A stretch of 64,000 nucleotides of DNA from contig OZ037769.1 of NCBI GenBank assembly GCA_964035545.1, forward strand, positions 6,429,929 to 6,493,928. Reading direction: 5' to 3'. A program made the translations under genes and the position numbers. The notes below the pieces were generated by a model. That model was not told where the DNA came from. It worked only from the letters and a program-made list of their open reading frames with translations, and searched no databases. The stretch's first letter is position 1. Every line of letters starts with the position of its first letter. Shown piece by piece: positions 801 through 53,300 of this stretch. Origin of the DNA: Bugula neritina (taxonomy: Eukaryota > Animalia > Bryozoa).

Positions 801-901
801 CTCAAGGCAAGTTTGTCAGCTCTCTTATTACAAGTTGTAAGACACATCTCTACGTACTGTTTATGATACACAGATTACTGCAGTGAACTGTTCAGCACCT
901 G
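801..901 (+). other. Probable non-coding 5' UTR exon of the NTase-TPR gene
   Basis: Acceptor TTTTCTACAG ends at 800 and donor G|GTAAGT follows at 901/902. All three frames contain stops. Confidence 0.45.
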
Positions 902-1269: not shown

Positions 1270-1492
1270 ATACTTCTAACTATTCTAACCTTAAAACAAG
1301 AAATGGTGTTTCTCTAAGATAAATTTAACTATAGCAGCTAAATTCTTCAACTTAAATATAATACAGTCCAGCAATAGAATAAAATAATTGAACAGTTCTT
1401 TGTAATTAAAATTGAACTATTAATATGTTACCTTTTAGATTGTCAAGTTTAATTGCTACTTAGGATAAATCTACAGAACATTTTCTGAAGAA

Positions 1493-4400
1493 ATGGAAGA
1501 CCAATATGTAGTAAGTCACTATATTCAATCGAAAAAAAAATAGTTTAAATTATCCATGGCTTGAGATATTTGAACTGAAAACACATGCACTCATGAACCT
1601 ATAATAGTTTAGAATAACATAAAATAAAGATTTTATATCAACTTTCACAAATAGTTGGCAAGTTGCAAGATAGAAATGTTTCTAAAGTTGAATAGAAGAA
1701 AATTTTCTGAATTCTGCATACATGTATATACAATTATATTTTCTTGATTGCAAAACCCAACCCTAAACTTTGCAGTTTGTTTTTGTCTGTTTGAATATAG
1801 TGAGTTTAATAAAAGATCACTACTTACAGTTAAACTCAGTGTAAGTTTTTCAACCGAGTCATTATAGGATATTTTTATAAAATTTGATTTGCGTACCAAT
1901 ATAATGCTATGCTAGTGCTTACTTTATAAGCTTATATTTACAATTACTTTATGATTATCCTGTACATACACCTATTGTAGATCACAGTAGAAGAGTTGAA
2001 GGAGTTCAAAATAGCCTACTGCCGTGCACCTGGTGGAAAATATAACCTAGAAGCCCCAATACCTTTTCTGAAAAAGTTAGCTGATGGATATCTAGACAAA
2101 TATAATACCACTGGTGATTGGACGGATATTCTCAAGGTAGTAAGCAAACAGAAGAAACTGAAAAAATGTATTTTGCATTAAAATCTCCGCAAACAAAACC
2201 TACAATTCCAGTATTTGCTGCAGTATGCATACAAATATTATTTTAACAACAAAGGAAACTGAGGATTATGTTTCTTTTGGCACTGGTACTGGCAAAATTG
2301 GCACATGTAAAAATGGCACAGGCAACAATGGCACTGGTAATAAGTGCACAAATGGAAAAGTAGAAAAAAATGGCACACTGATGTCAAATTTTCCCAAACC
2401 CCCCCCCCCCCCGAACACAAACCTTCAACCATTAAATCCCAACCCCAAACTAAAATCCCTATTCCCAAAGCTAAACCCTCATCTTAAACACCCAACCTTA
2501 CCCCTAACCCTAATATTGGAAATGTGCCATTTTCACTTACTTTGCCATTTTTACCAGACACCCTTATGTATATGATAGTCAGAAAAGTATCCTTAGACTT
2601 TTATTTTACTATGTATTTCAATTTTTTTAGGCTATTGACACTGATTGATAAGAAAACCTATAGCTTTGTCACTGTAATATATCACTTTTCAAATTCATTT
2701 TAGAGCCATGCTTTGTGTAACTCCATCTCTAAGCGAAAGGCTGGTGAAGCTGAATTGTGGAATAGAAAAGCTTTTGAAGCACAAAAGGCTTATTGGAAAG
2801 AAAATGGAGTTTGGAGCTACGAGATTCAACAATATGTGACTAGTCAACTAGTTGACCAGCTAGAAGAAATAAGGGAAGAGTGTAGAATGCAGATTAATCA
2901 TATTGAACGCTTAGTTGCACAGTATGATGACAACAAGATAACTCAATCTAACTTTACTGAGCAGTTTGTTTCCGGCGTCAAACAAATTTCGCTGAGTAGT
3001 TCTCAGAAAATGGCAGCGTTTGCAAAAAAGGTGTTTGAGTTCAGTGTCGCTAGTCTGTCCATTCTTCCACCTTGTAATTTTTGTGTAGTGGCACTGGGTT
3101 CTCTAGCTAAAGGCGAAGCAACACCCTACTCAGACTTAGAGTATTTGTTTCTAATTAAATCTTCCAATTGTGAAACAATCGCTTATTTTGAAAAACTTGC
3201 TCTTTCAAGCTATTTCATCATTGGAAACCTACAAGAAACAGATTTAGGGTACATGTCGATAGCAGAGCTGAAAGGGTGGTTTGATGACACACAAAAAAGT
3301 GGTTTCAAAATTGACGGCTTAAAAGATGGAGCTGGAAACATTCCAACTGGCAATGGATCTACTTCTCAGCAAAACCATTTTATCGTTACTCCAATGTCTC
3401 TAATTCACAAATACAAATCAGTTTTAGATGACCCTCAAAGTGATGCTATTGTTGGAGATCTTACTGCTAAATTACAGTTCACCAGACTAGTATACTGCCA
3501 CGGAGACGGTGCGGAAAAACTCTTGGAACAATTCACAGAACAAAAGCTTATGCTACAGCCTAATGACAGAAGGCAGGAAGTCAACAGAGAAATGTTTATT
3601 GCTGATGCAAAGAAATATGGCTTTACACCTACGGAAGAAATGATAAATAATGGATTTTCAATCAATACAAAAAAGGAGCTATATCGATATCCATCAATAT
3701 TACTTTACAACATTTTGATATTATTCAACATATCATTAACACATTCATGGGAAAGCTTGAACAACCTCAAAGAAATGAATCATATTTCTGTCTCTATACA
3801 CGAGCACATTCTATTTTTGTTGGCATGCGCATGTTACCTAAGACTTTCAACATATCATTTTTATGATTCAGCTGAAGAAAGCTTGTCGGTGCTTTCAGTG
3901 AACTATTTTACTTACCATGATGTTCAGAAGACTAGCATAGCAGAGATAAAAACTAGAAAAAAATGGTTCCTTCCGCAAAAACTGTTTAACCTGCATTGTG
4001 AGTATTCAATACCCTTAAAGAAGCACATTAGTGCGTGCAAGATTGACAATATCGAAGATGCTATAAGAGCAGCTGTGCAACAACCTAATTGGTTAGTGAG
4101 ATTTCAAACTTTTCATTGTTGCAATCGTTGGTCCAAAGGACAAGGTCTTCTTCGAGAACACATTAATTTAGAAACAGTTTTAAGAAATCCCGAGCAAACC
4201 ATCGACACAATTTACAGTTTAGTGAACTATGGCTTTGAAGAGTTGTGGAACACCATCAGGGCTTTAACTTATTCGTTAAGTCAAGAAAGAAAAAACAAAG
4301 AAGCCCTGGCTTACCACTTGATCATTCAAACAATGATAGAATCAGATTTGAGTGAAAAAAGCAATGGAGAGCAACAGTTAACCATGGCTGAGTCAAAAGC

Positions 4401-5583
4401 AGAGGCTGGTATGTGCTTTTATGGGTTGACTGATTTCAACAAAGCTATAGAGGAATATAAAAGTTCACTGCAGATTCGAAGTGCGTTTTTATCAAGTAAC
4501 CATGAGCAGTTGGCAAAGATGTACCTCTGCCTTGGAAGATCTTACTTAATGCTGTACAGATATCAAGAGGCTCACACTCATCTTTTCATTGCGCTGCAAA
4601 TCTGTCATAATCAAGCATTGAAGGAAGTTGAATACAACTACTATGGTGAAATTGTACATTCAGAAACTCCAATTCAACCTGTAGTTGGTCTCTTGAAAAA
4701 AAGTCCACAAGACAGGCTTCGTTATTTGAACAATTCATCTATTCTACTCGCCCATGTTTTGTGGACCATTGGATTGAACTATTTTTACACAAAGTACTTT
4801 GAGCTTTCGTTTTGTTATTTTAGCAAAGCCCAAGAGATGTTTTATGCTTGTTATGGAAGCAGAGCTTGTCATAGAGACATTTCCCATCTATTTTATGCTT
4901 TGGCTTGTGCTAGTTCTATGTTGGGACATCATGACGAAGCTGAGGAATATTTCAAACGGGGGATTGCAATGACAATTCAAATCTTTGGAAAAACAAACCG
5001 ATTCAAAGCTGCTGTATTACATTATTTTGCCATGAATGATTCGAAGATTTACCATAAAATTATATTCAGGATGTTTTTTAGTCTACCACGCTACCGCGTA
5101 GCACACTCTGAGTCTGCAACAGTTATAAGTCGATATGGATTGCATCTCACACACACTGGTGAGTATCCTCTAGCTGAAAATGTACTAAAAATAGCACTAC
5201 AGATGTACCATGCCAGTGCTAATGTTGGAAATAGCAAATATCCAGCCGGGTACATTTCTGTCACATTATCACATTTGGCTTTAAACTACTGGAAACAAGG
5301 AAAGATTCAGCTTGCCAAGAAGACTTTTGAACAATCTTTAGAGCCTCTCAATGAAATCGAGAAACTAATGCCTAATTCTGCTGATCTAGAGAGAGGAGAA
5401 ATCCTTCAAATGATGGGTGCCATGCACTTATCTCTTTTACAATATCACAATGCGATTGTTTACTTCCGTGAAGCAAAACAAAAATTTGTGTCTGCTTGCC
5501 ATGATCCAAATCATCCTAAAATTTATGAGGTTGAAAATCTAATTCGGTCTACATCAAGTCATCTTCAAAACCGAAGACTATAA
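1493..5583 (+). CDS. DUF294/GlnD-GlnE-like nucleotidyltransferase plus helical substrate-binding domain plus C-terminal TPR array, ~1017 aa; exons 1493-1510, 1981-2136 (or 2139), 2704-5583
   Basis: Phase-0 GT-AG joins give MEDQYV|ITVEELKEFK...DWTDILK|SHALCNSISKR... Pol-beta-superfamily NTase motif VVALGSLAKGEATPYSDLEYLFL at ~3085-3150, with a candidate third acid in GFKIDG. Helical KKELYRYP...FLLACACYLRLSTY segment follows, then many TPR-like units (e.g. AGMCFYGLTDFNKAIEEYKSSLQIR, LGRSYLMLYRYQEAHTHLFIAL, LALNYWKQGKIQLAKKTFEQSL). Confidence 0.85.
2278..2563. repeat. Intronic non-autonomous repeat (15-bp GGYAAAAATGGCACA-like subrepeats, C-rich CCCTAA-like core)
   Basis: Tandem AAAATGGCAC units on the left, inverted GTGCCATTTT/TGCCATTTTTACCAGACACCC on the right. 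Lies in an intron of the NTase-TPR gene. Confidence 0.55.
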
Positions 5584-5999
5584 TATTTCGGTATGCAAAG
5601 AGATAACAAATTTTTTAAATGCTTTACTTTTGTGTCTTTATCAGCAATGTAACTTAACATAACATATATTCTGTAGAGTTGGGTCTGTAACAAAATGTAT
5701 TTTTCAAGTAGATATGCATACAACTTTTAAAAAAACATTATGTAATGTTCTATTAAAATTTTACAAAAAATTGTGGCTTTGGAATCACATACCATCCTAA
5801 TCTTGCAGAATATACTTTATTGATATCATAGGATTAAATTTAATAAATTAACAATGTGAGATGTAATTTAATAAAAACATTAAACATTTGCTAACTTTCA
5901 ATAGCGTGAAATGAATAATACGATAGAGTGTAGTGTAGCATTATAGCACCAGGTTTTATAAAAATTGCAGAATAATGTTTAGCCTTAGGCCCTCATATT

Positions 6000-15898: not shown

Positions 15899-18800
15899 TT
15901 ATTCTACTGTCAGTTTAATTTTAATATTTACTGCTGCCAGTTCTGCTGCCAAATATCTGAAGCTGAAAGGAACGTCAATGTGAGAAATATGGTCGGCAGA
16001 GTCACAAACTGAGCAGTGCCAGCGTTTCCTGCCAACTTGTTCAGTGGTAGCTGATGTATTGGCAGTACTTCCTGCGAGGTGTGGAGACAGCAAGCTGCCA
16101 CACTTTCGACATATCGGTGCCTACAACACACAGTATAAATGGAGCAGGCATAATGATTTATGTTTGCTTGGTATTTGATGCTTCCAGTCGTCATAGCACA
16201 CTACGTAAATTACTCGTTACATAATTTTGTACATAAACCATCAATTATCCACTTTATATAACTAATGGCTGAAAAGTTTTTACACAAATTTGATTAAATA
16301 TAATTTTATCGATTCAGAGATGAACAGACTAAGAAAATCTAATGTTAAATTCATTCCGACAAACTTTAGAGCACAACTGTATATTTCTTTAAATGAGATG
16401 CTGTGAATATCCTTTGGCTACTGACTGCAAAACCTAGTCACAACACAAAACAATAGATGATTCACCTTGCTCAAGTCGGAGCAGGTCTGAAGACGGTCTT
16501 GCAGGAGGAAAGCAGATCCATGTGATAGAAGTCCATCTCTCTCCATTTCACCGAATCGCACACCACCACCTTTAGCTCTGCCCTTCACCGGCTGCCTAGT
16601 GAGAGGGTCCCTGGCTCCAGTAGTACGCACCTGAGTTGTGATAATTTATTGCTCATTTGTTAATTTAGTAAAATGGTGATAAGATGTCTTGAGCTAAATG
16701 ATTGGATGATAATGATCAGCCTTGATGAAATTATCTATGAACAGCACGCTGAAGAATCTTGCAGAATAGCTAGCATTAATCTAGAGAAAGATATCTGTTT
16801 GGTTTCAGAACAACTCAAGTCCTAAGAGATGATTAAATATGAGAAGTAATCTTTCTTTCAAATATATACAGCCCCTCCTCCAGTGAAGGGCAGCCCTAAC
16901 ACTAAACTAAAAACGCCAACACCACTACAGCAGTTTAATAGTCCAGAGATGCAGTGCACACAACACAGATTTTTGAGTTTAACTTCATAAAACTCAAAAC
17001 TGCCCATCATTTGCAGAAATAATTCAAAACTACATTCGACCACTGGGTTTATTTAAAACTTGGCAACATTTGACTTGTGTGTTCGAGAAGTTTCACGGAG
17101 CACAGACCATACCAAACTCTCACAATTCAGAAAGTATTAGCTTTAGAACCTTACTTGGAACTTGTCCGAGACCATGTGACGGAGTCTCTGGTAATAGACA
17201 ACGCCCATAAATATGTCTGCTTCCATCTCTAGCCCAGTCTCACCAGAATACAGCCGCTCAGTGCCATAATAATTGTATCCAGCTGAATAAGAATGTTAAC
17301 AGCAAAGTTTTATACGTTGAGAATGCAAAAATAATTTGCAAGGTCAAACAATCATATAACTTCAAGTCTGGGAAAGAGTCACTGTTTAGTAGAATTCTTA
17401 GAGCCAAAACTTAGCAACACTGAGTGAATATCTAGTAATTCAGCAACAAGTGAATGGAAATTCAATTGCATGCACCTGCATGAATGTGTGTGCATAGGGC
17501 TTTAGGGAAGCACTAATAAAACTTAGTCACTCAAAATGATCTGACTTGAAGGTTATATATGAATGCCAAGTACCTGCAAACTTTAAATGATTCTCACTAA
17601 AGAGATATAAACTATTTTTGTCCATCAAGATTAAAATAAAGTGTCAAAAGCATTCTTAATTATGAAGGAAACTCTTTAACCATTCACGCATTAAAAACAC
17701 AAAAATCAACACACAGTGTAGGCTTCACATTCATAGTAGGCTATCAACTTCTAGTGAATCAATATGAGATCTGCAGTTTATTGAGAGAAGACAACTACCA
17801 ACTAAAAACTATAAATTTTACAGCCTATATGAGAAACAGCATTGAGTTATTGTCATCACAAAATGGAGTTACACTAATATCTGTTGTGGTATAACAGACT
17901 AAGCCAAACATGTTCTACTAGTAAAATGTCCTACAAGACAGAATGTGTTCCTGAATAGAACACAAGTAAAGTTTCAGAACTAATAGCAAAACAAGGACAG
18001 TTGGTATAGTAATAATATGATTCAAATTTTGAATAAACTTCAAGAAAGCTTGCTGCGAAGGTCATTTAATTGTCCAAGTTGTGCCCTAGCAATTTAATTT
18101 TCTATCTTATAGTTTTACATTAGCATTCACAATTAACACTTTTGATATTTTCAAAAATTACTGCTGATGAATCAATAAAAAATTTCCATTCGCAACAGAC
18201 GTATTGCAGGTATGCAGCTAAGATAATTTGTCAAATGTGATAAAACTTTTCTGAGACTAGTAACTTTCTGTGCGGATGTGGTAGAGCCTACAAGTATTTA
18301 TTGTTGCACATGAAGTAGCAAGTAGATAAACTGACAAACTTGTTACTGTAGGTTATACCTTTGAGCAGAGTTTTGCCGAAAAAGTCAACAGCCGAATCCT
18401 TCTCTGAGAAAGTGAACGGAGTGGCGTCAAAGGGAATCCCGTGACAGGCGGAGGATTTGCCAGCCATGGTCTCCACCATCATACCTGTAAGGAGTTGTGT
18501 GACAAAAATAACATAATAAATACCTTTATAATATGTCAGCTTGAACAATGAAGGATTATAACAACGTAGATATCTGCTGTGATAAAAGTAGTTGTTGGAG
18601 TTTAATTTACCTCCAGTGAAACCAAACTGTTGCAAGAGCAAATAACTTCTCAAAACAATCAAAAATCAGAAAAGTTAATTTGTCCCAACATACCAAATCA
18701 TTCATCAATATGTTAAATGGCATATTAGTAATGGCTACACTCTCCATGTACACAACAGTTTCTAAGTGCATAGTGTATATATTGTACATAAAAAGAGGAG

Positions 18801-21800
18801 TTATCCACTCTTGGCGCCTATTTGATACATGTGACACTCTCTATTATATCCTATCAGAAGGCATCTGACTACTTCTGCTGCTACTACCACTACCCCTACC
18901 CCTACCGCTACCCCTACCACTACCACTACCCCTACCCCTACCGCTACCCCTACCACTACCCCTACCACTACCCCTACCCCTACCACTACCCCTACCACTA
19001 CCCCTACCACTACCCCTACCACTACCACTACCACTACCCCTACCACTACCACTACCGCTACCCCTACCACTACCACTACCGCTGCCACTACTTCTGCTGC
19101 TACTACCCCTACCACTACCCCTACCACTACCCCTACCACTACCCCTACCACTACCACTACCACTACCCCTACCACTACCACTACCGCTACCCCTACCACT
19201 ACCACTACCGCTGCCACTACTTCTGCTGCTACTACCCCTACCACTACCCCTACCACTACCCCTACCACTACCACTACCCCTACCCCTACCACTACCGCTG
19301 CCACTACTACCACTACCCCTACCACTACCACTACCGCTACCCCTACCACTACCACTACCGCTGCCACTACTTCTGCTGCTACTACCCCTACCACTACCCC
19401 TACCACTACCCCTACCCCTACCACTACCACTACCACTACCCCTACCCCTACCACTACCGCTGCCACTACTACCACTGCTACTACTGTAGAAATTATTTTA
19501 GAAATTTTCATATGACATGTGAAAAAAATTCAAAGATCAACTTTTTGCCCCCCAGTGCATATTTCAGACAATGTACTGCTAAGCAACGTCAGTTGTGAAC
19601 TATTGACATAGTCATAAGCTGTAGGAGCTTAGAGTATAAAAAAAATGTTATTTTTGTTTGCCCAGAGTTTAAAACTGAATTAAAGGTAAATACCTATAGT
19701 CATACGAGAAGGGTAGCCATGAGGGTTGAACAAGATATCAGGAGTGATTCCAGATTCTGAAAAAGGCATGTCAGCAACTGGCCACAACTGACTGCAGATT
19801 CCCTTTTGCCCGGCTCTACTTGCAAATTTATCACCAATAATGGGATTTCTCTGCAACACAATATTGGAACCTTCCAGAACCAAGTATTATAGATCACAGA
19901 GATGATGGTGTATGCAGGTCATTCATTTACCTAACTCGGCATCTTCCAACACACTCTGCACGCATTTCACCAACAGTAACAGACATCAAATACCCCACTA
20001 TCATTAATAAAACTAGTGAATAGTTTAAACAAGGAGTTGTTTGCTTAAATATAATGGTGATTCTAAAAAATCCCATGAGAACATGCTAGCTAAGTAATTT
20101 AGTTACACATAGAGTTACAGAGTTACACATACGAACTACAGAAGGCTATCTCAGTAGCGGGACTATTAGCTTACAACTAAGAGTTACAGAGTTACACTAT
20201 CTCAGTAGCGGGACTATTAGCTTACAACTAAGAGTTACAGAGTTACACTATCTCAGTAGCGGGACTATTAGCTTACAACTAAGAGTTACAGAGTTACACT
20301 ATCTCAGTAGCGGGACTATTAGCTTACAACTAAGAGTTACAGAGTTACACTATCTCAGTAGCGGGACTATTAGCTTACAACTAAGAGTTACAGAGTTACA
20401 CTATCTCAGTAGCGGGACTATTAGCTTACAACTAAGAGTTACAGAGTTACACTATCTCAGTAACAGGACTGTTAGCTTACAACTAAGAGTTACAGAGTTA
20501 CACTATCTCAGTAACTGGACTATTAGCTTACAACTATTCGATAAGTAATGGAAATCTTTGTCAACTTCTGGTCTCCATTTTCATGTCCTAAAAGTTTTAC
20601 CGTATCCACATAGGCTGGTTCATCATTCTTGTACTTCTCTACCCATAGCTGTCCAGTTAGCAGGTTGCAGTAACTGAAACAGCAATATCAATAAGAAACC
20701 ATAAAAATGAGGATGCTTTATTAACTGATATAACATTTCGTTAGTTCACAAAGTTTTACAGTGGCTAGAAAATTGCAGATTCTATTCTAACAAAAAATAC
20801 GTTTAAAGTTCTATTTATTATCCTATGTTCTCATGCATATTAAACAGCTCATTGCATACCATCAGCTGAGTAACGTAAACAAATAAGATCATTTATCAAA
20901 CCGGTGACATCACCTGTCACATAGTCTATCACCAGACACAACAGATGCGTGACATACTATATTTCCTAATTACACAAGAGAGAACACAACTCCACTGTAT
21001 CTGCAGCACCTGTACAGAGGGCATCCAGACTCTAGATATACACCGACATGAGGCAGGCCGTCTTCACCGATATATTTATTCATTTCATCATCAGCTGACG
21101 TGCTGCCGTTGATAAACACGACAGAGTTAGCACTAAGCTTGTCCGTCTTTTCAAGCAGGTCAACCACCTGTAGAACATCGCGTCACTTGCCAACCATTCA
21201 TCAATGTCAAGTCGTGATTAATTTGCATAATTTATTCAAAAGCACAAACTTCTGACAAAAAATGTAGTAATATTTTTACAGATTATTATCGAAAATTATC
21301 AATAATAGCAAATGATTCACTTTTCCTAAACTTTAAAAACAACCTTAAATACTGGATACAACTAATTTTAAAACAAATTCACAATTTTAAAATAATTACA
21401 AGTTGCTAGGCAACTCCTGTCACTGTAATCATGTTGGCGGTGGACAGAGAAGACCATACAGTAGACAGAACCTACCTCTGTTTTTAGAACTGAGCCATGA
21501 GCAAACCCTCGCTGAAATGAGCCCTTATTCAGGATAAAGGCATCTTCCATGTCATAACCCTTGTAAAAATATGGGAGACATTAACTTCAATATGTATAAT
21601 AATTTTATTTGTTGCTTCAACTTATTTAGGTTCATTCGTCAACACTTTATCAGTTTTAGGTAAAAATGAATATAATATATCAGCAGTAAAATTTATATAT
21701 GCATCAATTTCATTTGTTGCTTCAAACTACAGAAAACTAAATTACAGGCCGTAAAATCATAAAGAGTGAAATACTTGTAAATGAAAAGAGAATTATTTGA

Positions 21801-24800
21801 AATAATTTTAAGAAAGTCATCAAGGAAGCCAGAAAAGAAAAACACAGACCTTATAATATATTTTTAAACAAATAAAATTTTGCCAGAAAAGACTAGTCTG
21901 TAAAAAATAACTCTGACTTCTACGATTTTCAAACCAAAAATATGTTATTTACGTTACTTAAAACTGATGTACACCACATAATATACTGTTGGCATACGAT
22001 ATTCAATATTGAGTTCGTTTTTTCTAGTAAACAGACCAGCTACAACACTAATCTATGTATACAACACACTGGACAGATACTAAACACAGCAAGCAACATG
22101 AGAACCGCACATGACTCATACCGTATGGGATATGACCGCCACTATAGCATTAGTGCCAAGAGGGTACTCATCAATGGCGTACTGGTCGTGGGCCTGAGGC
22201 CGAACCAGAGGGCTCTGTGGTGTGCGGATTCGGTAGAGTTTGTTATCAGATCGGTACTGATAAGCATACATTGGTGTCCCCATGGTTTGCTTTCCCATCT
22301 AGAATATACAATTGAGTTGCGGTGAAGGCAAGCATACATTACAGTAGTAGAGGCAGGCATACATTGCAGGGGTGGAGGCAGGCATACATTACAGGGGTGG
22401 AGGCAGGCATACATTACAGGGGTGGAGGCAGGCATAAATTGCAGGAGTAGACAAGTCTTTCTTTAGTTGCAAGTGCAAACACTTGACCGATAATTGGAAC
22501 AGCAAAAACTTGCTTTGCCTTCAACACTTTCCAGAAATAAAAGTGAACTATTTTTTTAGATAATAAAAAAGATGATGTAAATACGCTTCAAAGATTTGAG
22601 TCAAGTAAAAATACATGGTTATGTGAAAATATATATTATCATTTCTACATGTTCAGCATTCAAAGCATGAATAGGGAGTATCTTGAATTGACACAACATG
22701 GTATTATCATTTCGCCATATGCAGCCGCTAAAGCAGTGCACCCAAGCTTGACAAGGTTTTAGAATCATCCAACTGGATGTCTTGCTAGAGAGCGAATAAC
22801 ATTACCCATAACACAATATAATACAGGTGGAGGGTTTTGGATTTTTTAGTGAACCGTAGCTATTTGGAGCAGAGACAGAATACGTTGGTGTTCTGTTAAC
22901 AGGATTCTGTACTGGAATTTTAATCTGATAAATAATTTTGCTGGCCATACCATTAAACGACTGACAATTTTAAGAATAACAACTTACAGATAAAACAATA
23001 ATCAAATATTATAAAATTATGTGAAAATATGAATATATCCAAGTAATTACCTACTGCATGAAACACACAGCTGGCCAGGGATGAGGTTTATGGAAAACAA
23101 TCAAGCAACAAGGAAGGCTAGAACTGATATCAGATGAGCCATAACAGGCGCTTTCTAGATTTAGAATTATTTTCATTGCTGACTGGTGGGATTCAGACAG
23201 CAAAATGGCTCATGTTGCAACATAATATTATTAATTATGATTGTTATAATCAACTTTAACTAATAATGACTTGCTATGAATTAGTGCTGGGACAGTAATG
23301 AAGCATGCTACTATTACATAATACACAGACTAATGATGCTTTCACTTTCCCACCATTTCCTGTCTTCAATCAGTATGTCATTCGAAGATGAAAAAAAACA
23401 AATTAAAATGTAAACACGGCAGCCTATGACCTCAAAAAGGTCAGCAATAACCGTGAAACATGTGACGTTATCGACTTAATTCTTGCAAATTATAAATATA
23501 ACACAATGCCAAAATTTTGTTAAATAATTTCCTCAACTCAACTTTGGCATAAAGTCTCAAGCAAATCAGGCGAAGCCAAACCTGTCTAGAAGAACTTGGT
23601 TGACACACATTCAGCTCAACATATGAACTAGTAAACTGAACAGACTGAGAAATCACTCACCCAAGTCACAAAACTGGCATTCAAGGACATCTCCAAGTGA
23701 TGTGTGGAATCTCAATCAAATAGAATAGGCTAGTTTATTTGTTTTCATTAAATATTTAAAATTAATTAAAATTTCAAAAACATTTAAACCAAAGAAAACC
23801 AGCTATTTGATTAAGTAAGGTTACTCAAGTCTAATAAATTTAAGCATAAAATGACTTGTTTGACTTAGTCTAGTGACTTAGCCCTGTGACTTAGTTCTTA
23901 GGCTTAGCCCCAGGTACCGTTGGCCCCTTACCTGACACTGGTACATATTTCGAGGACTCTGGTTGAAGTCGGAAAAAGGCGTAAGACCGGCGACATAGCT
24001 GAGCATGCTCGTTGGACTACACTCTATGTGTGTGGTGATTGGCTGAGTATCATCTCCTTTCACAATCTCGCTGCTCCTCACCGCTATATCCATATACACT
24101 TGCTCGAAACTACCTGCAGAACAGCCGACAGGAAGTTAATTATTAGGACAGAGTAGGCGATGGGAGATAACTCTTGGAAACAAACAAATCTGAAGTTCAA
24201 ATACACATGCAGCTTGCTTATGGAACAGACATAGCCTTAGCGCTCGAAGCGCAGGGGGTATAGCTATACCCCCTGCGCTTCGAGCGCTAAGGGTATAGCT
24301 CCCACATGGGTCCTCAATGGTAAACATAGGGCACCTACCCACAACAGCTGCTAATATGCTACATTTATTCATTGGGGGTGCATTTAGCACTGTTCAAGTC
24401 AACAGTCCTGGTAAATGGTTGCTCAACAGAATGTTTTTTTAGAAAACTCAGAAATTTTAGATGAGCAGTTTATAGTCAATAGCAATAGCAATAAACAAAC
24501 CAATCAAATTTATTGCCCACGTGATGGAGTCGTGATTTAAGAGAACCCAAAGTGAAGAAACAGGTGAAGAAACTTACCAATCCACTCGGTAGCGCCGTAT
24601 TTCAAATTGACCACAGGCCTCATCATCCTGCCAACACTGGTAAACAGATACACACCCGGATATTGACTCGGCTGGCTCGTCCTAGGAACTGCAGCTATTT
24701 CCAGGAAAGGTGTTATCTACAGAAAACACAACGACCTCTTCACACAGAGCTGCCACAAATGTACTCAATCAAGAGCGCTGCCATCAGTGTTATAGTGTTA

Positions 24801-27800
24801 TATAATACAAACCTTGTATTTAGCTTCAATATTTAGTATAATTATTTTGTTGACTAAACAATGTGGATACAGAGAGTAGAGTATATGCCAACTTTTGATG
24901 GCACGTAAACCTCAAAACTGCATAAATTAATAACATGATGCAACAAATTAATAAAATAATGTATCGCTTCCTGTATTCTCCACTTGGTAACTGTGAGATG
25001 ACAGTGCAACATACCAGTGCATTTCCAGACTCGCCCTTTGGCCCATACTCTATCAGCTTGCACCTTCTCAGCTTGTCCACCATACGCTCTAGCTCCTTGC
25101 TATGTACATATCCCAGCACCTTCCCATCTAAGAACACCTGCAACAACGTGGTAAGAACATGAATAAGGAATTTCAAATAGTTGGAAAATTGAAAAGGATA
25201 AAAGCTAAAAATGGCAGCAAAATTATTTGTATCCATACATTATACTTTAGCCAGAGTCATCAACAGGGGAGATAACTGCTAGATTTTTTTTTGATTATTG
25301 TAATAATAGCTAATCTACTGCAACTCAACCTATTCCTTTGTAGCAAAATAAGAAAGATCCAATTTCGAAACAAAACATGAAAACACTTTTCTCTGCAAAA
25401 GCTTTAAATTTTGCAGAATAAACTAAAAACTTTAGTATTACAACATAGATGCACATTGCAAAATTTTTTTAGAATTAAACATGAAATTCTGCTTCAAAAC
25501 CGTAAAGTGAGTTTATAATTTACAATTGCAGAAAATGGATATGCCCCATTCTTCAATGAAAATCTTCAAATGTTTAAAACGCAAATAGCCAAAAGTAATG
25601 TACACCTATAAGCGAATAAAGTACGGTGCAGCCTCAAACCTCGTAGTAGTTGCTGAGGCTACCTAGCAGAGTATCAGTAGGTGTGAGGAGACCATTGGAT
25701 GCCAAGAATCTCTCCAGAGGCTGACTGGGTCCTGTGGTGTTCACAGCCACGCAGGAGGCTGACAGGTGGTTTAGGAGCCCACAGGGGGTGCCGTCTGGTG
25801 TGTGCACTGGGCACAGGAACCCCCACGCTTCTGGTAACAGCTTACGGACAGCTGTGGATTGTCTGTTGTTAGCAAAGAAGGCACCTCGATGAACAGCTCG
25901 GAAATGTGACAAGTATCTATAAAAATTGAGCTTGTCAGCCATTACACTCAGCGCAGTTTTCTACAAAAGAGGAAGTATATATTTTTATACCGTAAGCTCC
26001 AATTTTTATAACTATACCAGGAAAAATTCTAAGATGTGATGAAACTTCTTTATTTTCATCCTAAAATTAAATCTTGTATAAATTGCTCTCCAGTTTCTTG
26101 GTTTTAAAACTATGTACTTTGTATGAATTCTTAAAAGTGAAAAAGAAACAATGTCACTTTTATCAATATTCTAGCATTTAGTTAAAGAATTTGTGAACAG
26201 CTATCAGCATCTAGATATTAGATATACTCAACAAAAAATGTAGCAACTCCTGGGAGTGAAATAATTCTACCTCAGCCAGACAAAGACAAAGAGCATGTTA
26301 CCCTCCATATGACCAGCACTGTATTAGTTGCTACATATTACCAGCACTGTATTAGTCGCTTCATATGGCCAGCACTGTATTAGTTGCTTCATATGGCCAG
26401 CACTGTATTAGTTGCTTCATAAGGCCAGCACTGTATTAGTTGCTACATATGACCAGCACTGTATTAGTTGCTTCATATGGCCAGCACTGTATTAGTTGCT
26501 ACATATTACCAGCACTGTATTAGTTGCTAGAAAGATCAACACTAGCTATAAAGGTTCTTTTGTCTAGTCTCATCTGAATACAGAAGAGAATCATCTGGCA
26601 ACAGCATCATGTATAAACAACACTGACCTGGGGCAGTCCAAGTGTAGATTTAGACTGGAGGTTTCCAGTGGCTAACAAATATTCGATGGCCTTCCCAACA
26701 TCTGTACCTCTGTTTAGACATTCGTTCAGCACACCTACAGAGTACGTATGCAGCCTTATTTCATATGTGCCTGACGCTCATGAGAATTAGCACAAATGGG
26801 AAATGACTTATAATTAATTACTGCATTATTAAAATAAAATTTGGTGTGAAACAACAGTGAGAAGTGAAAAGGTTATGCTAAAAAGTTAATTTTTGGTTTA
26901 AAAAATAAAAGATAAAATTTTGTAAAAGGATAGAGTTGGGGGGCAGGCAGCCATGATTTTCAATATAGCAGAAAAAACATGTCTCTGAATGAAAATATCA
27001 TAAGAAGTAAAAATCTACTAGTACTCTCCTGGTCCATGCATATGTAATATCTGTATCGTATTTCAGCAGTGATAGCATCTTTCAAATATCATAGATTGAG
27101 ATATAATTATTGTGACTTTTTAGTTTTCCACGGTGTTGAAAACAAACATGTATTGGCCTTCATAATTTCAACAAAATGACCCAATTAAAAATTTACAACA
27201 TCTTGATTAAAAGAGATGGAATAGATAAAATTCTCTTGAAAACCATGTGGAATACTGTGTTGAGGGACAGGCAGTAGCCACATTCTTACAACCACACAGT
27301 TATATAGTATATAACAATCCAACACAGGCAGCGTGGACTTAGGCAGCAGTATACATGATCAAAAGACTTACTGGCGGACAGCTCAAACTTCTCATTAGTA
27401 GCTTTTTTCAATAGGAGATACTTGAGAGAGGTGAGATATACACAGAGTCTGTCAGTGAGGACTGCAGCGTACAGATGGCCAGGCAGCAGAAGCTGTAAAC
27501 ACACAATAACACAATAATATTACATGGTTGTTGACACTCCGAAAGAAATTATTCCAGAAGTAGATGCATTTATTGAAGCTTAATTTGAACATTCTTCCAA
27601 GTTGCAAAATCAATGCTGTAATAGATTATCAAAGCCTCCATTTATTGGGTTATGAAAACTATTTGTAAGTTGTCTCGCCACACCTTTTACTTTGACAGTT
27701 TCATGCCACTACTGATTTAGTTTTTGTCTACACTCTATACCAAATCCTCTTTGTTCATCAAAAACTCTATGATTCAACTGAAATTCAGGCAAATTTAAAA

Positions 27801-40689: not shown

Positions 40690-43600
40690 ATAAAAAACAG
40701 AAAATGATGTACAAAAACGTCCAATCAAGGTGAGATTTGAGGATGAGCAATCAAAATGGGAGTTCGTTAAAAGGTTCAACAATCAAATACTGAGAGAACA
40801 AGGTATTTACTGCAGACTTGATGAAAGCAAAGAAATCCGAAATCAACAATTCCAGCTGAGAAAGGAAGTTAACAGGCTTAGAGAGGAAAATACATCTATA
40901 GCATTTCGAGTGAGAGACATGCATATACAAGAAAAGCAAGCCTCGGGGGAATGGAAAATAATGAAACAAGTCCAGCAAAAGAGAGTGACGGAATGCTGAA
41001 AGTATTCCTCGCCAACACTAGATCTGTTAAAGGTAAAACCACTGAACTGCAATTTCTCACCACAGATTCTGACATAATTTGTGTCACTGAAACACACCTA
41101 GGTGACACAATACCTAATAGCAATATTCTACCAATCAAGAACAAAACAGTATTTCGTCGTGATCGCAACATTTGTGGGGGAGGAGTTATGGTGGCTGTAT
41201 GCGACCGTTTAAATCCCAAACTAGTAGATCTTAGTGAGTATAGGGAAGAGGTGGTAGCAGTGAAAATTCAACCACGAATGGTCATCTGCTGTTACTACAG
41301 ACCTTATGTACATCTCTCCAACACAGATGTTATAAATGATATTTTGGATTACCTACAAAGAGAGTATCAAAGGCACACTATTTTGTTTGTTGGAGATATG
41401 AACTTTCCAGGGATTGACTGGAATACAAAAGCAGTAAAGCCCTTGACCCCATACAAAAAGATTCATCAGAATTTTCTTAATGTACTAAATAGCCATAAAA
41501 TGACTCAAGTGGTAAAAGGATCAACACACCTTCTTGGTAACACGCTGGACTTAATATGCACCAACCAGCCTAACGTTATATGTGACACTGAGATCATAAG
41601 CCCAGGTCTTAGTGATCATTCATTGATCATTACTCATGTCCAAAGTGCAACCACCGCTACCCTGAGAAAACCACAAACTTTCCGGCTGTACAAGAAAGCC
41701 AATCAAGAAGCATTTCAGGAAGATATGCAAAAAACATCAGAGGCATTAGCAGTTTTGGAGGACCCAGAGGAAATGTGGAATCTCTTCGCGGAAAACTTAC
41801 AAAGAAGTATTGGTCAGCACGTCCCAATCAAGCAGCTGAAATCACCCCACCCCTCTGTCCCAGAGTGGTTCAATAAACAAGCTATGAAAATCAAAGAAAG
41901 AGTAAGGAAGGCACATAGGCGATCCAAAGTCAGCTCAAATAGCTTTGATCGTGAACAGTACAAAAAACTGAGAAGAGACGGGAAGAAAGAGCTGGAAGTA
42001 ATACGAAAAACCTTTTACACAAACAGAATATATCGTCCACTAAAAAGAGGGAACTCAAAGCCTTTCTTCAAACTGCTTAAAGCAGACAAAAACAAAAGAC
42101 AAGAGCTATTGGTACTGAAGGACGATCAAAATATAGTGACGGAAGATCCTGTCCAATGCGCTGAGTTGTTGAACACTTTTTTCCAGAGTCAGTTCCAGCT
42201 GGGCTTTATGGCAGAAGACTTCTCAAGGATCGAAACCGATGCCCAAGATTCTATTGATGTTACACCAGAAGGGGTTGCCAAACTTATCCAAAATTTGCCA
42301 AATGGAAAATCGCCAGGACCTGATGGAATTCGAAAGCCTGACATGCTCATAGACTTGGAGGGTACTGCTAGATGTCTTGCTCTGATCTACAAAAGTTCCT
42401 TAGACACAGGTAAACTGCCAAAACAGTGGAAACTTGCAAATGTCACACCAATACATAAAGGCGGGGGCAGTGAATCTCCAAACAACTTTAGGCCCGTATC
42501 CCTGACAAGTATTCCCTGTAAAATGATGGAGCACATCGTGCTTCATCACCTCAATGAAAAGCTTGACAGTGTGCTTCACCATCGACAGCATGGTTTTAGG
42601 AAAGGACTGTCCTGCCAAACTCAACTGTGTGTTACCTACCATGACCTAGTAAAAGCAGCCGATGAAGGACATACTACCCATGCAGTAGTTATGGATTTCA
42701 AAAAGGCTTTTGACAAGGTACCTCACCTTATGTTGCTCCAAAAATTACAAGAGATACCGGGTATAAATGGATACCTCCTTAACTGGATACTCGATTTTCT
42801 TTCCGACCGACAGCAGTCTGTTGTACTTAGAGGGGCAAGCTCTCAAAAGTGCCGAGTAACCTCAGGAGTGCCGCAGGGATCTGTGCTAGGCCCAATCCTG
42901 TTTTTGTGCTATATAAATGATCTTCCGGATTTGTTGTCATGTAAAGTCAGCCTCTATGCTGATGACACTCTACTTTACCAAACTGTGAACACCACTAAGG
43001 ATGCAGAACTATTCCAAACTAATATTAACGCTGTATATGAGTGGTCTCTAAAATGGAAAGTGCCCTTCAATGAACAGAAATGCCAAGCAATTAATTTTGG
43101 TAAGGTAACCCCTATATCACACTACAAACTCGGTACCACATGCCTTGCGTGGGTACAAAGCACTAAATACCTTGGGGTAACCATCCAGTCAAACCTAAAG
43201 TTTGATTAACACATAAATAACAAGTGTACCAAGTCCCGGAAAATTCTTGGCGGCATCAAGCATTTGATGTATGATGCCCCAAAAGATGCTAAGCTATTGG
43301 CTTATACAAGTCTATGTAGGCCTATACTCGATTATGCGGATGTGGTTTGGGATCCTGCGGCTAGGGGTAAAGTGCATGATATAGAGCTGGTCCAGAACAG
43401 TGCCATACGATTTATAAGCAATATGAAGGGACGTGCTGACAGTGTTTCTGAGGCGAGGGATGAGTTAGGACTCCGGTCGCTGGAAGACAGACGAAAAAAT
43501 CATCGACTGTGTTTGCTGACCCGAATTCTTCAAAATGAGGATCAACACCAGTCTCTATCCAGAGCCTATGACGAAATAATTGAAGGCAGGGAACTTGTAA

Positions 43601-43862
43601 CTGTAACCACTCGAGCGGCTGCCAGAGGAGAGCTTATCTCTATATCATCTAGGAAAAACTTATTCCACACTAGTTTTCTACCACGAACAATTCGTGAAAT
43701 GCGCGGAGAATATAATAACTAATTACAAAACAGCAAATGCTGTAACTAGTGCTAACCCTGGTCCAATGTAAGTTTTCACTAGAGGCTTCCCTATAGACTT
43801 TCCAGTTGCTGCGGAAGTCCTACCTCAACTGAGGTAATAAACTGAGGTAATAATAAATAAAT
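40690..43862 (+). mobile_element. 5'-truncated non-LTR retrotransposon (APE + RT LINE; CR1/L2-group-like, clade uncertain)
   Basis: ORF1 C-terminal remnant at 40730-40999 overlaps the ORF2 start. ORF2 has APE motifs (LANTRS, CVTETHL, GGGVM, YYRP, GDMN, TLDL, SDH) and RT motifs (KSPGPDGI, QHGFR, DFKKAFD, GVPQGSVLGP, YADD, KYLGV). The 3' end is a short tandem tail (AACTGAGGTAATA x2, then ATAAATAAA). The 5' boundary is approximate. Confidence 0.93.
40951..43722 (+). pseudogene. LINE ORF2 (endonuclease-reverse transcriptase) interrupted by one in-frame TAA at 43207-43209
   Basis: ORFs 40951-43209 and 43264-43722 are in the same frame. Reading through gives NLKFD*HINNKCTK...LLAYTSLCRPILDYADVVW, a typical ORF2 C-terminal region. 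Confidence 0.9.
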
Positions 43863-50300: not shown

Positions 50301-53300
50301 TCTTTACACTGTTTTGCACAACTCAAGTTACAGATAAGCGATAAATTCACAATAGTATATATTATCTACAAAAAATACATAACTCATCAACAAACTCACT
50401 TAGGTTAGCTCGTCAATAAAACAGCTACCTTAGTCTCTGATTATTAATAAGCATACAGACACTTGCACACCACATTTAAAGTTACCAGTTACCTTGACAA
50501 TAGACGTGTGTTGAGTTCTATCAGATGCCCCTCCAGCCAGATTCTCTAAAGTTGTTATCTGAGCCAACAGCTGTTTATTCCTAATCCGTTCATCTTCTAA
50601 CTTAGTGGACAGTTCACCCAGCTAGTAATAGAATGCAGAACTTGGTAGCAAATATTTTGAATTTATATATAAATTAGTATACAGAATATATCCAGTAGAT
50701 GGCATAACACAACTTTTCAAAAATTTTATTTTAAAAAAATATACTTCGAAAATAAACAGTTTGCAAATGGACATATCAAAAATAGGACACTTTCAATGGA
50801 TATATAAAAAAATGACATATTGAAAAATTGTCACTTTGAAAATGGGATCAGCTCTAAAATCTAGTTGGGTTCAAATGAGAAACTTTGATTGTAGACTACT
50901 AGGTAAAAAAACTTTTTATGTGCTTCTTTGTGAACTGTCTTTGTAAAATGACATTATTGAAAGATGGCGGAGTTGCCAAATAGATAGTATGGAAAAAGCA
51001 ATATTGTTAAGGCGCTATCAATAGTATGAAAATAATGGTATCATATCTCATACCTGAACCACCATCTCCATACGCTCATTAACCTCCAAGTCTTCTTGAC
51101 TCATCCTTCTTTTTTCTTTCTCTAAATCTCTCAACTTTTCACACATTTTCTCATAGTCAGACTTTAAATTGTCATAGTTAGTAATCAGATCATCATGAGC
51201 CTTCTTTAAATCCTGCTAACAGAATTATGCTTGGAAGTGTTGCAAGGAAAAATTTGAAAACAGCAAACGCTATCAGTTTTCTTGTGTTGATAATGTCAAA
51301 AATAACAATTACACAGAGCAACTTACTGTTGAGGTATTAGAATCAGGTTTGTTAGAGCTGGACTTGTCTACTGAAGCTACTACTGCCATGTCATTACTGT
51401 CATCACTATCACTGGATGACTCAGAGTCACTGCTACTCAAAGATATCCCTTCTGAAGCCATCAAAACATCCACTGGGTTACCAGACAATACTTTATCTAC
51501 AGTTGAGGTCGCTGAAATGTGTTTACCATTGCCTGAGGAACTCGCTGCTTCATGTCTGCCGGCAATGATCGTGTCTTGCGCAACATTACTGGTGGTGTTT
51601 GAGTCAACCTGACACAACACAGTGCCATCTTCAGCATCTAAATCAGTGACCATGATTAACTTCTTAGACTGAGTTACAGAGTTGTCTGTCGGTAGATGTA
51701 GTGCGGGCCCATCCTCTGTACCCTTGCACTGTGTGTCTCCATGTGTTGTAGAATGATTCTCATGGCTACTTCTGCCATGTTTTTCTAAATTTCTAAAAAT
51801 GCAGAACCATATATGTTATGATGCGTATTGAAAATATCTTATTTCTACCAAAACACAAAATTTCTATTAAACTCTAAGCCGAGCTCTCGAGTCATTACGA
51901 ATAACAACTCCAAATTTAAGAAGAATATTTGAAATCCTGCACACCACATATAAATATTAAAGAGTAATTTAAGTACAAATTAAAGTCTGTCTTGCTTGAG
52001 TTTTAACAGTTTGCTCTTCTATATTGTAAATACTAAGTTTTACCTTCAAGCTATAAGGGCCAGGCATATATTCTTAATCTTGACTTAGCAATAAAACTAA
52101 ACGTGTCCACACAATTAATTTAGTATATAGTATAACCTAATTTGAATAACCTATTCAGAAATGAACAAAAATAGTGCCACTAATTCTAAATTGAAATTTT
52201 AAAAGAATTCTTAAATCTTGCTTTATAACATACAATCTCCAATTTATGAGATTCTCCTAAAGTTGTACTCTGGCCCAGTGCCATAAAATTATAGACAAGT
52301 GTGAAAGTTGAACAATTATGTCAGGAAAGAACTTCCATGCGCTTTCAGTATGCTATGTAAAGTCAGCCGTCAGCTATCATATAATCGATACAGTATCACT
52401 GAAGATTAGTTACTCAACCCAACAACTGAGTATTGAGAGAACAGTAGTTTAAATCAGACTTTACATCTTTCACACAAATAGCAGCACAAAGTAAAGCTGA
52501 AAACTCGACAGAAATAGTAATATGTGAACGCACCTGTCACTCGTTTGAAGTTGAGTATTCTGTAAGTCTTTCAACTGAGATGTCACAAAACTGTTGGTAG
52601 CAGTGTGACGAGTTCGAAAAGTCTGGTAGTCAGAAGTATAGAGACAAGTAGCATACAGCTTGCTAATCCAGTTGAGAGTAAATAGAGTAGACTTTATTTC
52701 TCTAGTAAGACATGCACAGATGAACTTATAAAAATGAACTCCAAGAATGAACTGCGAGAATGAACTGATTCGTAAACACAACTGCCTCAGTATTTATAGT
52801 AAACAAAACACTCTAGAACATTCTCAAGCATTCCAGTATAGAATATTCTAGTAGAAAACATTCCCCACATGCCAATACTATTTATAGAAAATCAAAACAA
52901 AACAAAACATTGGAATTTCCATGGTTATTCGCAATTATTGCGCAACACCTTGTTTACATTGCTGGGCAGTAGTTAACATGACTAATGAAAACAATAACAA
53001 TGAACAATGACCCATCTCTTTGATCAGTCTAGAACATTTATGAACATTCGTGTATAATCATTAGGAAAAACCCGGTAAGTCTATTTATAGGTATATGTAC
53101 ACTCAGAATTTGTGACAACCCCCCATTCTAAGAGAAATTATCTTGATCATTTCTCCTAACTACTTAAAATTCTGAGTCAATTCGGCTTAGATAATCAGCT
53201 CCAACATTGTCCTTTTCTTGGATTGACTCCACCTTGATTCTGAAGTCCTGTAAATACATAGCCCATCTCATCACTCTGCTGTTTCTTACTGTACAGGTCC

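What the first reader, a model, noticed from the sequence alone, without database searches (positions are those of the whole stretch)
1493..5583. Animal DUF294/GlnD-like nucleotidyltransferase fused to a TPR array: candidate uncharacterised signalling or innate-immune enzyme
Seen: an intact spliced ~1017-aa gene with GS-x10-D-x-E (LGSLAKGEATPYSDLEY), a downstream helical domain and roughly 400 aa of TPR-like repeats. Established: this signature belongs to the Pol-beta NTase superfamily, and the LGS.AR/KGE....SD.D/E form is typical of bacterial GlnD/GlnE/DUF294 protein-modifying NTases rather than of well-studied animal NTases (cGAS/cGLR, OAS, poly(A) polymerases/TENTs, Pol X). Enzyme-plus-repeat architectures are common in immune and conflict proteins. 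Inference: the TPRs sense a ligand or recruit a substrate and switch on protein AMPylation/UMPylation or nucleotide second-messenger synthesis, as a cGLR/OAS-independent NTase system in invertebrates. I recall similar architectures in intracellular bacteria and a few marine invertebrates but know of no functional study; that recollection needs checking.
Basis: partly seen in the sequence, partly recalled or inferred. Interest (0 to 1): 0.88.

Follow-up and report, generated by a model that had tools for sequence, protein, structure and literature searches.

The report
Bryozoan DrrA-type enzyme with TPR array
This moss-animal gene joins a binding scaffold to an enzyme built like the bacterial proteins that attach AMP to other proteins; it is one of about 60 copies of an untested family also multiplied in amphioxus and in bacteria that live inside amoebae, and it would be a third kind of protein-AMPylating enzyme in animals.

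Summary
The gene is intact and spliced (6+52+959 aa); related RNA contigs about 92% identical show both joints. The genome is Bugula neritina or very close. The enzyme part folds like Legionella DrrA (Z 22.4) and both halves of E. coli GlnE (Z 20-21); all other nucleotidyltransferases score 6 or less, and cGAS/OAS do not appear. The catalytic D-x-E and a third Asp are kept in 99% of 478 homologous domains. About nine TPR hairpins follow. The gene ends a 7-copy tandem cluster; the genome has at least 63 loci (53 with a long open exon). The same enzyme-TPR layout occurs in amphioxus, the annelid Owenia, Neochlamydia and Jidaibacter. Best reading: a cytosolic TPR-targeted protein nucleotidylyl-transferase, probably an AMPylase. 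Second-messenger synthesis is unlikely. A defence role is inferred only from gene birth and death: this gene's own clade shows purifying selection throughout, TPRs included (M7/M8 not significant). I found no paper on the animal family. The scan already described this family from another cluster of the same genome (s1-456718).

The parts
801..901 (+). Untranslated upstream exon (3' end supported, 5' end inferred from an AG at 799-800; more exon sequence probably lies further upstream)
   Evidence: Loose end of an RNA-type contig before 1438 matches 872-900; GT donor at 902
1439..1510 (+). Exon with the start codon (ATG 1493; 6 codons)
   Evidence: AG at 1437-38, GTAAGT at 1511; joint skipping 470 nt in runs X1 and X6; in-frame stop at 1466 upstream
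1981..2136 (+). Coding exon, 52 aa, not hydrophobic (no signal peptide or membrane segment)
   Evidence: Found in all 14 paralogue loci tested (51-92% identity) and in Watersipora P0007 (48%); hydropathy; GT..AG joint to 2704
2291..2560 (.). High-copy repeat inside the intron; not part of the protein
   Evidence: Contig depth about 40,000 in a DNA-like run; tandem repeat at 2291-2350
2704..5583 (+). Large coding exon, 959 aa plus stop; holds the whole enzyme and the TPR array
2836..3888 (+). DrrA/GlnE-type nucleotidyltransferase: N-terminal helices, Pol-beta core and C-terminal helical (KNTase_C/HEPN-like) lobe; exon-3 residues 45-395
   Evidence: AlphaFold pLDDT 92.9; Z 22.4 to DrrA 6yx5 over 273 residues, 20.9 and 19.9 to the two GlnE halves
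3097..3141 (+). Catalytic motif G-S-x10-D-x-E (G132, S133, D144, E146)
   Evidence: D144 in 475 and E146 in 474 of 478 domains; aligns with DrrA G98-S99/D110/D112 and GlnE D701/D703
3313..3315 (+). Probable third metal-binding acid, D204
   Evidence: 473 of 478 domains; aligns with the Asp of the GlnE Y-E-V-D strand, D752 in MG1655 numbering, given as D753 in PMC7815794; alignment is weak (probability 3.8%, E 0.011)
3670..3855 (+). Conserved basic residues of the helical lobe (K323, R328, R380) and Y384; likely nucleotide-phosphate contacts (inferred)
   Evidence: K323 472, R328 470, R380 471 of 478; weak match to the K..R and R of DrrA's C-lobe
4234..5577 (+). TPR array, about nine helical hairpins plus a capping helix, with a 40-aa insert at 4621-4740
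   Evidence: Pfam TPR_12/TPR_10; secondary structure of the model; Foldseek hits to TPR superhelices
5584..5900 (+). 3' untranslated region (end not fixed; AATAAA at 5842 and 5870)
   Evidence: RNA-type contigs of X1, X3 and X6 run through it; unique among the seven cluster copies beyond 5662

Best explanation
A cytosolic protein nucleotidylyl-transferase of the DrrA/GlnE class. Shown: intact gene, fold, conserved active site, no signal peptide, multigene family with frequent gain and loss. Inferred from the fold class: three acids (D144, E146, D204) hold Mg2+ and an NTP, most likely ATP, and the enzyme transfers NMP to a hydroxyl (typically Tyr) of a target protein, changing its activity. Inferred from the architecture: the TPR array binds a partner protein or peptide that is either the substrate or an activator, and different paralogues have different partners. 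Inferred from birth-and-death evolution and from sharing with endosymbiont effector families: the family acts in conflict with intracellular microbes or in self/non-self responses. This particular copy belongs to a fixed-length, conserved clade, so it more likely binds a stable (host or conserved microbial) partner than a fast-changing one.
For: Fold: DrrA Z 22.4, GlnE halves 20.9 and 19.9, next unrelated family 6.0; Foldseek E 1e-7 to 1e-6 for the same three; profile search of the PDB puts DrrA first, E 1e-4. The solved members of this class act on protein Tyr-AMP (PMC12409994, PMC8097203). Catalytic residues 99% conserved across bryozoans, amphioxus and bacteria; enzyme core dN/dS 0.15. At least 63 loci, 53 with a long open exon and 10 broken, in tandem clusters. 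Hundreds of amphioxus homologues. Neochlamydia F-box/OTU-DUF294-TPR family of 50 putative host-directed effectors (PMC4209131).
Against: No activity, nucleotide or substrate is shown. Sequence identity to DrrA and GlnE is 11-16%, and a shared fold shows no function. No positive selection in this clade (M7 v M8 p 0.22 and 0.65), which weakens the pathogen-sensor part. No expression data under challenge. The deadenylylating half of GlnE fits equally well.
Confidence: 0.5

Rival explanations
1. Same protein-NMPylating enzyme, but a regulator of the animal's own physiology or development (for example small GTPases or metabolic enzymes), with no defence role; the expansion is drift or dosage.
For: Purifying selection over the whole protein and nearly fixed length (901-975 aa) in 14 clade members; transcripts seen in ordinary RNA runs.
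Against: Patchy distribution, separate large expansions in bryozoans and amphioxus, 10 of 63 loci broken, array length 861-2267 aa in the sister clades, TPR dN/dS 1.25 in one pair of another cluster.
Confidence: 0.2
2. TPR-gated synthase of a nucleotide second messenger or short oligonucleotide, working like cGAS/OAS or Hailong HalB.
For: Pol-beta superfamily active site; sensor-plus-enzyme layout; HalB appears weakly (Z 4.7) and CdnE at E 0.11.
Against: Those matches are at background level against Z 20-22 for protein-modifying enzymes; no Mab-21 or OAS Pfam hit at E up to 1.
Confidence: 0.12
3. A deAMPylase: it removes AMP that microbial effectors put on host proteins, by phosphorolysis as in the N-terminal half of GlnE.
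For: GlnE's removing domain 1v4a scores Z 20.9, tied with the transferring domain at 19.9.
Against: DrrA, a transferase, is the best match; the profile alignment extends to the third acid only with GlnE's transferring half, though both alignments are weak.
Confidence: 0.08
4. Nucleotidylates small molecules (antibiotics or symbiont metabolites), as aminoglycoside nucleotidyltransferases do.
For: ANT enzymes are the next hits (Z 5.8-6.0).
Against: Far weaker than DrrA/GlnE; a 450-aa TPR array points to a macromolecular partner.
Confidence: 0.05
5. Bacterial contamination, or an inactive inserted symbiont gene.
For: Nearest non-animal relatives are endosymbiont proteins; the enzyme and TPRs lie in one intron-free exon.
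Against: Spliceosomal introns seen spliced; lies on a 17.7-Mb contig among animal genes and transposons; orthologues in Watersipora and Bugula annotations; purifying selection.
Confidence: 0.01

Closest known systems
Legionella DrrA/SidM AMPylase domain (PDB 6yx5; Pfam SidM_N)
   Same: Whole two-lobed fold (Z 22.4, 273 residues, rmsd 3.7), G-S-L-A...T-x-Y-S-D-L motif, three-acid site.
   Different: 16% identity; D-x-E instead of D-x-D; followed by TPRs instead of GEF and PI4P-binding domains; host-encoded, multicopy; substrate unknown.
E. coli GlnE (GS-ATase) halves, GlnD and bacterial CBS-DUF294 proteins
   Same: Fold (Z 20-21; ESM Atlas TM 0.69-0.74 to DUF294+DUF294_C and GlnE clusters), catalytic acids align.
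   Different: Single enzyme domain, no paired removing domain, no HD/ACT/CBS domains; TPR array; Pfam GlnE and DUF294_C not hit by this protein.
Neochlamydia NEX2 family (F-box, sometimes OTU, DUF294, TPR; Domman et al. 2014, PMC4209131)
   Same: Homologous enzyme domain with the same invariant residues, C-terminal TPR array, large lineage-specific expansion.
   Different: Bacterial putative effectors with F-box/OTU; bryozoan proteins lack these and sit on a long separate branch; function untested in both.
Branchiostoma and Bugula proteins auto-named 'Protein-PII uridylyltransferase N-terminal domain-containing protein' (often mis-named KLC, TTC28 or OGT)
   Same: Same family and architecture (ESM Atlas TM 0.88 over the enzyme).
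   Different: Only database labels; no paper found that describes them.
Coral TPR-CHAT and glycosyltransferase-TPR expansions (PMC12314368)
   Same: Enzyme plus variable TPR array, tandem expansion in a sessile marine animal.
   Different: Different enzyme; function also unproven.
Animal AMPylases FICD and SelO
   Same: Proposed reaction; FICD also carries TPRs.
   Different: Unrelated folds (Fic, pseudokinase); single-copy; ER or mitochondrial.

Membership tests
Pol-beta nucleotidyltransferase superfamily | G-S-x(9-13)-D/E-x-D/E on the beta core | tested here: met
   strands E126-131 and E145-151 in the model
Pol-beta nucleotidyltransferase superfamily | Third carboxylate clustered with the first two | tested here: inconclusive
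GlnE/GlnD/DrrA/DUF294 class | N-terminal helices + NTase core + C-terminal KNTase_C helical lobe as one fold | tested here: met
   Z 20-22 over 273-283 residues; Pfam DUF294 above cut-off
GlnE/GlnD/DrrA/DUF294 class | Transfers NMP to (or removes it from) a protein tyrosine | not testable with these tools
   Needs biochemistry
DrrA/SidM orthologue | GEF and P4M domains; SidM_N above cut-off | tested here: not met
   SidM_N 14.5 bits v cut-off 27; C-terminus is TPR
GlnD / GlnE orthologue | Full-length match with HD+ACT domains, or paired NT domains | tested here: not met
   TIGR01693 13.7 bits v cut-off 519; one NT domain only
cGAS/cGLR, OAS, CD-NTase | Mab-21/OAS fold or family hit | tested here: not met
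   No Pfam hit at E up to 1; not among significant fold matches
Active HEPN RNase | Conserved R-x4-6-H motif in the helical lobe | tested here: not met
   The window protein has R380-x4-H by chance of sequence, but only 175 of 470 domains have any such His and only 10 at this spacing; PMC3710099 lists this class as lacking the motif
Neochlamydia NEX2 | DUF294 domain followed by multiple TPRs | tested here: met
Neochlamydia NEX2 | N-terminal F-box (most members) or OTU | tested here: not met
   No hit in either coding exon searched; only 58 aa precede the large exon
Diversifying innate immune receptor families (NLR-like behaviour) | Tandem expansion with gene birth and death | tested here: met
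   63 loci, 10 broken, clusters on several chromosomes
Diversifying innate immune receptor families (NLR-like behaviour) | Positive selection in the repeat domain | tested here: not met
   This gene's clade: M7 v M8 p 0.22 (6 genes) and 0.65 (11 genes). One pair of another cluster gives 1.25
Diversifying innate immune receptor families (NLR-like behaviour) | Induced by or responding to infection | not testable with these tools
   Only assembled contigs of unchallenged or undescribed samples were available

The most novel reading that the evidence does not exclude
Sessile marine invertebrates run an undescribed immune receptor-enzyme system, shared by gene transfer with amoebal endosymbionts, in which TPR arrays recognise microbial or non-self proteins and a DrrA-type domain AMPylates host or invader proteins; variable clades act as sensors and conserved clades such as this one as executors or guards.
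Probability: 0.3. Interest if true: 0.9.

Novelty: new variant of a known kind. Interest (0 to 1): 0.68.

Why it matters
Reviews list only two classes of animal AMPylase, Fic and SelO (PMC8097203); the GlnE/DrrA class is described from bacteria only. A transcribed, conserved, 60-copy family of that class in bryozoans, with hundreds of homologues in a chordate, would be a third class and offers many single-exon, easily expressed enzymes to test. It also makes the 50-member Neochlamydia DUF294-TPR family testable as DrrA-like effectors, and raises the question of exchange of effector genes between endosymbionts and animals.

Tried and rejected
The spliced model was searched exon by exon, by reference; the joined protein was not built, searched or folded, so the structure models lack the first 58 residues. 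No homologue in viral contigs or viral structures. PADLOC gave only short motif-level hits (PDC-M70A, PDC-S09), not taken as membership. A pattern scan of 185,579 bacterial and archaeal genomes gave three loci; the patterns were bryozoan-biased, so this does not give the bacterial range. Ten literature searches found no description of the animal family; the library lacks most subscription journals. Active HEPN RNase, cGAS/OAS membership, GlnD/GlnE orthology and contamination were tested and rejected. Direction and number of gene transfers could not be settled: bryozoans form one strongly supported group (100/99), but the branch separating bacteria from animals has only 60/78 support, the tree has no root, no AU test was run, and several 'bacterial' rows were labelled by their grouping, not by a record.

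Full report
Gene model. The sequence has an ATG at 1493 after an in-frame stop at 1466, and coding exons 1493-1510, 1981-2136 and 2704-5583 with canonical splice sites. All searches used single exons by reference; the joined protein was left out. Residue numbers below count from the start of the large exon (add 58 for full length). Contigs of three probable RNA runs skip 2137-2703 with GT..AG ends, two also skip 1511-1980, and one has a loose end that matches 872-900, which shows a further untranslated exon. These contigs are about 92% identical to the window. Their diagnostic letters in the large exon resemble two neighbouring paralogues (29 and 28 of 32), but their exon 2 is much closer to the window than those paralogues are, and they run on through a 3' flank that no other cluster copy has. 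The simplest reading is the corresponding locus in another strain or cryptic species. Transcription of this exact allele is not shown. A Bugula neritina protein matches the genome at 96%, and neighbours in the databases are Watersipora and bryozoan metagenome contigs, so the host is B. neritina or a close relative.

Domains and fold. Pfam gives DUF294 above its cut-off, TPR repeats, and a weak SidM_N hit. AlphaFold models of the whole exon (pLDDT 92.4, pTM 0.92) and of residues 45-395 (pLDDT 92.9) are confident. The enzyme model matches Legionella DrrA (Z 22.4, 273 residues), the removing half of E. coli GlnE (20.9) and its transferring half (19.9); the best other family scores 6.0. Foldseek agrees, a profile search of PDB sequences ranks DrrA first, and the ESM Atlas returns DUF294/DUF294_C and GlnE clusters plus a mostly chordate DUF294-TPR cluster at TM 0.88. 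cGAS, OAS and CD-NTases are not significant matches. Residues about 511-958 form roughly nine TPR hairpins with one 40-aa insert. There is no signal peptide or clear membrane segment.

Active site. DrrA uses G98-S99...D110-x-D112 and D150; GlnE uses D701, D703 and a third Asp (PMC7815794). Here G132, S133, D144 and E146 match the first motif, and D204 aligns with GlnE's third acid in a weak but motif-consistent profile alignment. Across 478 homologous domains, D144, E146, D204, K323, R328 and R380 are each kept in 98-99%, in bryozoans, amphioxus and bacteria alike. The helical lobe belongs to the class that Anantharaman et al. list as HEPN-like without RNase residues (PMC3710099), and the R-x4-6-H motif is not conserved here.

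Family. Two independent queries find the same 66 matches in the genome, which reduce to 63 loci: 53 with an open exon of 861-2267 aa and 10 broken or truncated. The window's gene is the last of seven tandem copies spread over about 85 kb, 86-90% identical in protein; one of them stops at 610 aa. It belongs to a clade of 14 intact genes of nearly fixed length (901-975 aa); the other 39 vary widely in TPR number. A profile finds 2308 representatives at 50% clustering. Named homologues come from Branchiostoma (869 hits to one query, the listed 120 nearly all amphioxus), Neochlamydia and Parachlamydiaceae, Jidaibacter and the annelid Owenia. The Neochlamydia proteins are the F-box/OTU-DUF294-TPR family NEX2 of Domman et al. 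(PMC4209131). In trees the bryozoan proteins form one well supported group on a long branch; relations among amphioxus, Owenia and bacteria are unresolved, so transfer from or to endosymbionts is plausible but its direction is not shown.

Selection. Pairwise dN/dS in the window's cluster is 0.14-0.15 in the enzyme core and 0.22-0.32 in the TPRs. Codon site models fitted here find no class above 1 (M7 v M8 p 0.22 for 6 genes, 0.65 for 11; M8a v M8 p 0.08-0.10); gene conversion was not screened. One pair from the cluster at 15.9-16.1 Mb on the same chromosome gives 1.25 in the TPRs against 0.32 in the enzyme. That single pair agrees with an earlier scan note on that cluster (s1-456718), but the fast-evolving groove does not extend to this gene's clade.

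Mechanism. The characterised members of this fold class add NMP to, or remove it from, a protein tyrosine (GlnD uridylylating PII is from my own knowledge). I therefore take the protein to be a cytosolic protein nucleotidylyl-transferase, most likely an AMPylase, with the TPR array choosing or gating the target. I put protein modification of some kind at about 0.75-0.8, and the full reading with a defence or conflict role at 0.5. The defence part rests on birth-and-death evolution, patchy expansion in sessile or aggregating marine animals, and kinship with endosymbiont effector families; nothing here tests it directly.

Novelty. The enzyme class is known, the architecture is published for Neochlamydia, and databases auto-annotate the animal proteins. 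I found no paper that describes the animal family or tests any member, and reviews list only Fic and SelO as animal AMPylases. This is a new variant of a known kind. The scan has noted the family before in other windows of this genome. Interest 0.68.

Noticed in passing
P0222 / L064:10001-25385: Owenia fusiformis encodes a spliced OTU + two DUF294 + TPR protein, nested on the opposite strand inside a large Sushi-domain gene; the OTU-DUF294-TPR order matches Neochlamydia NEX2 members.
   Followed up: partly
P0122, P0361, P0167, P0426 and others: Several amphioxus and bacterial proteins carry two or three enzyme modules in one chain.
   Followed up: no
L024 and L027 (G000:C5 about 15.96 and 16.11 Mb): TPR dN/dS 1.25 against 0.32 in the enzyme for this one pair; points to diversifying selection in a different clade of the family.
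   Followed up: partly
Alignment: Amphioxus and bacterial members share H170, A202, K212 and H252, where bryozoans have Y, K, N and D; may mean a different nucleotide or target preference in bryozoans.
   Followed up: no
ESM Atlas rows: A DUF294 cluster of 292-aa proteins is mostly eukaryotic with ciliates commonest among the few named; other eukaryotes may hold related enzymes.
   Followed up: no
window 18288-25236 (-): Exons of a second-largest RNA polymerase subunit gene (Pfam RNA_pol_Rpb2_6); a hexamer repeat array of 97 copies lies at 18883-19469.
   Followed up: no
window 40951-43722 (+), 53195-56318 (-), 61850-62967 (+): A LINE with endonuclease and reverse transcriptase, an LTR-retrotransposon gag/integrase frame with a SCAN-like hit, and pieces of a Tc1-type transposase.
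   Followed up: no
NZ_AP017978.1: Eleven places matching the DUF294-TPR family on a 231-kb Neochlamydia S13 replicon filed as a plasmid.
   Followed up: no
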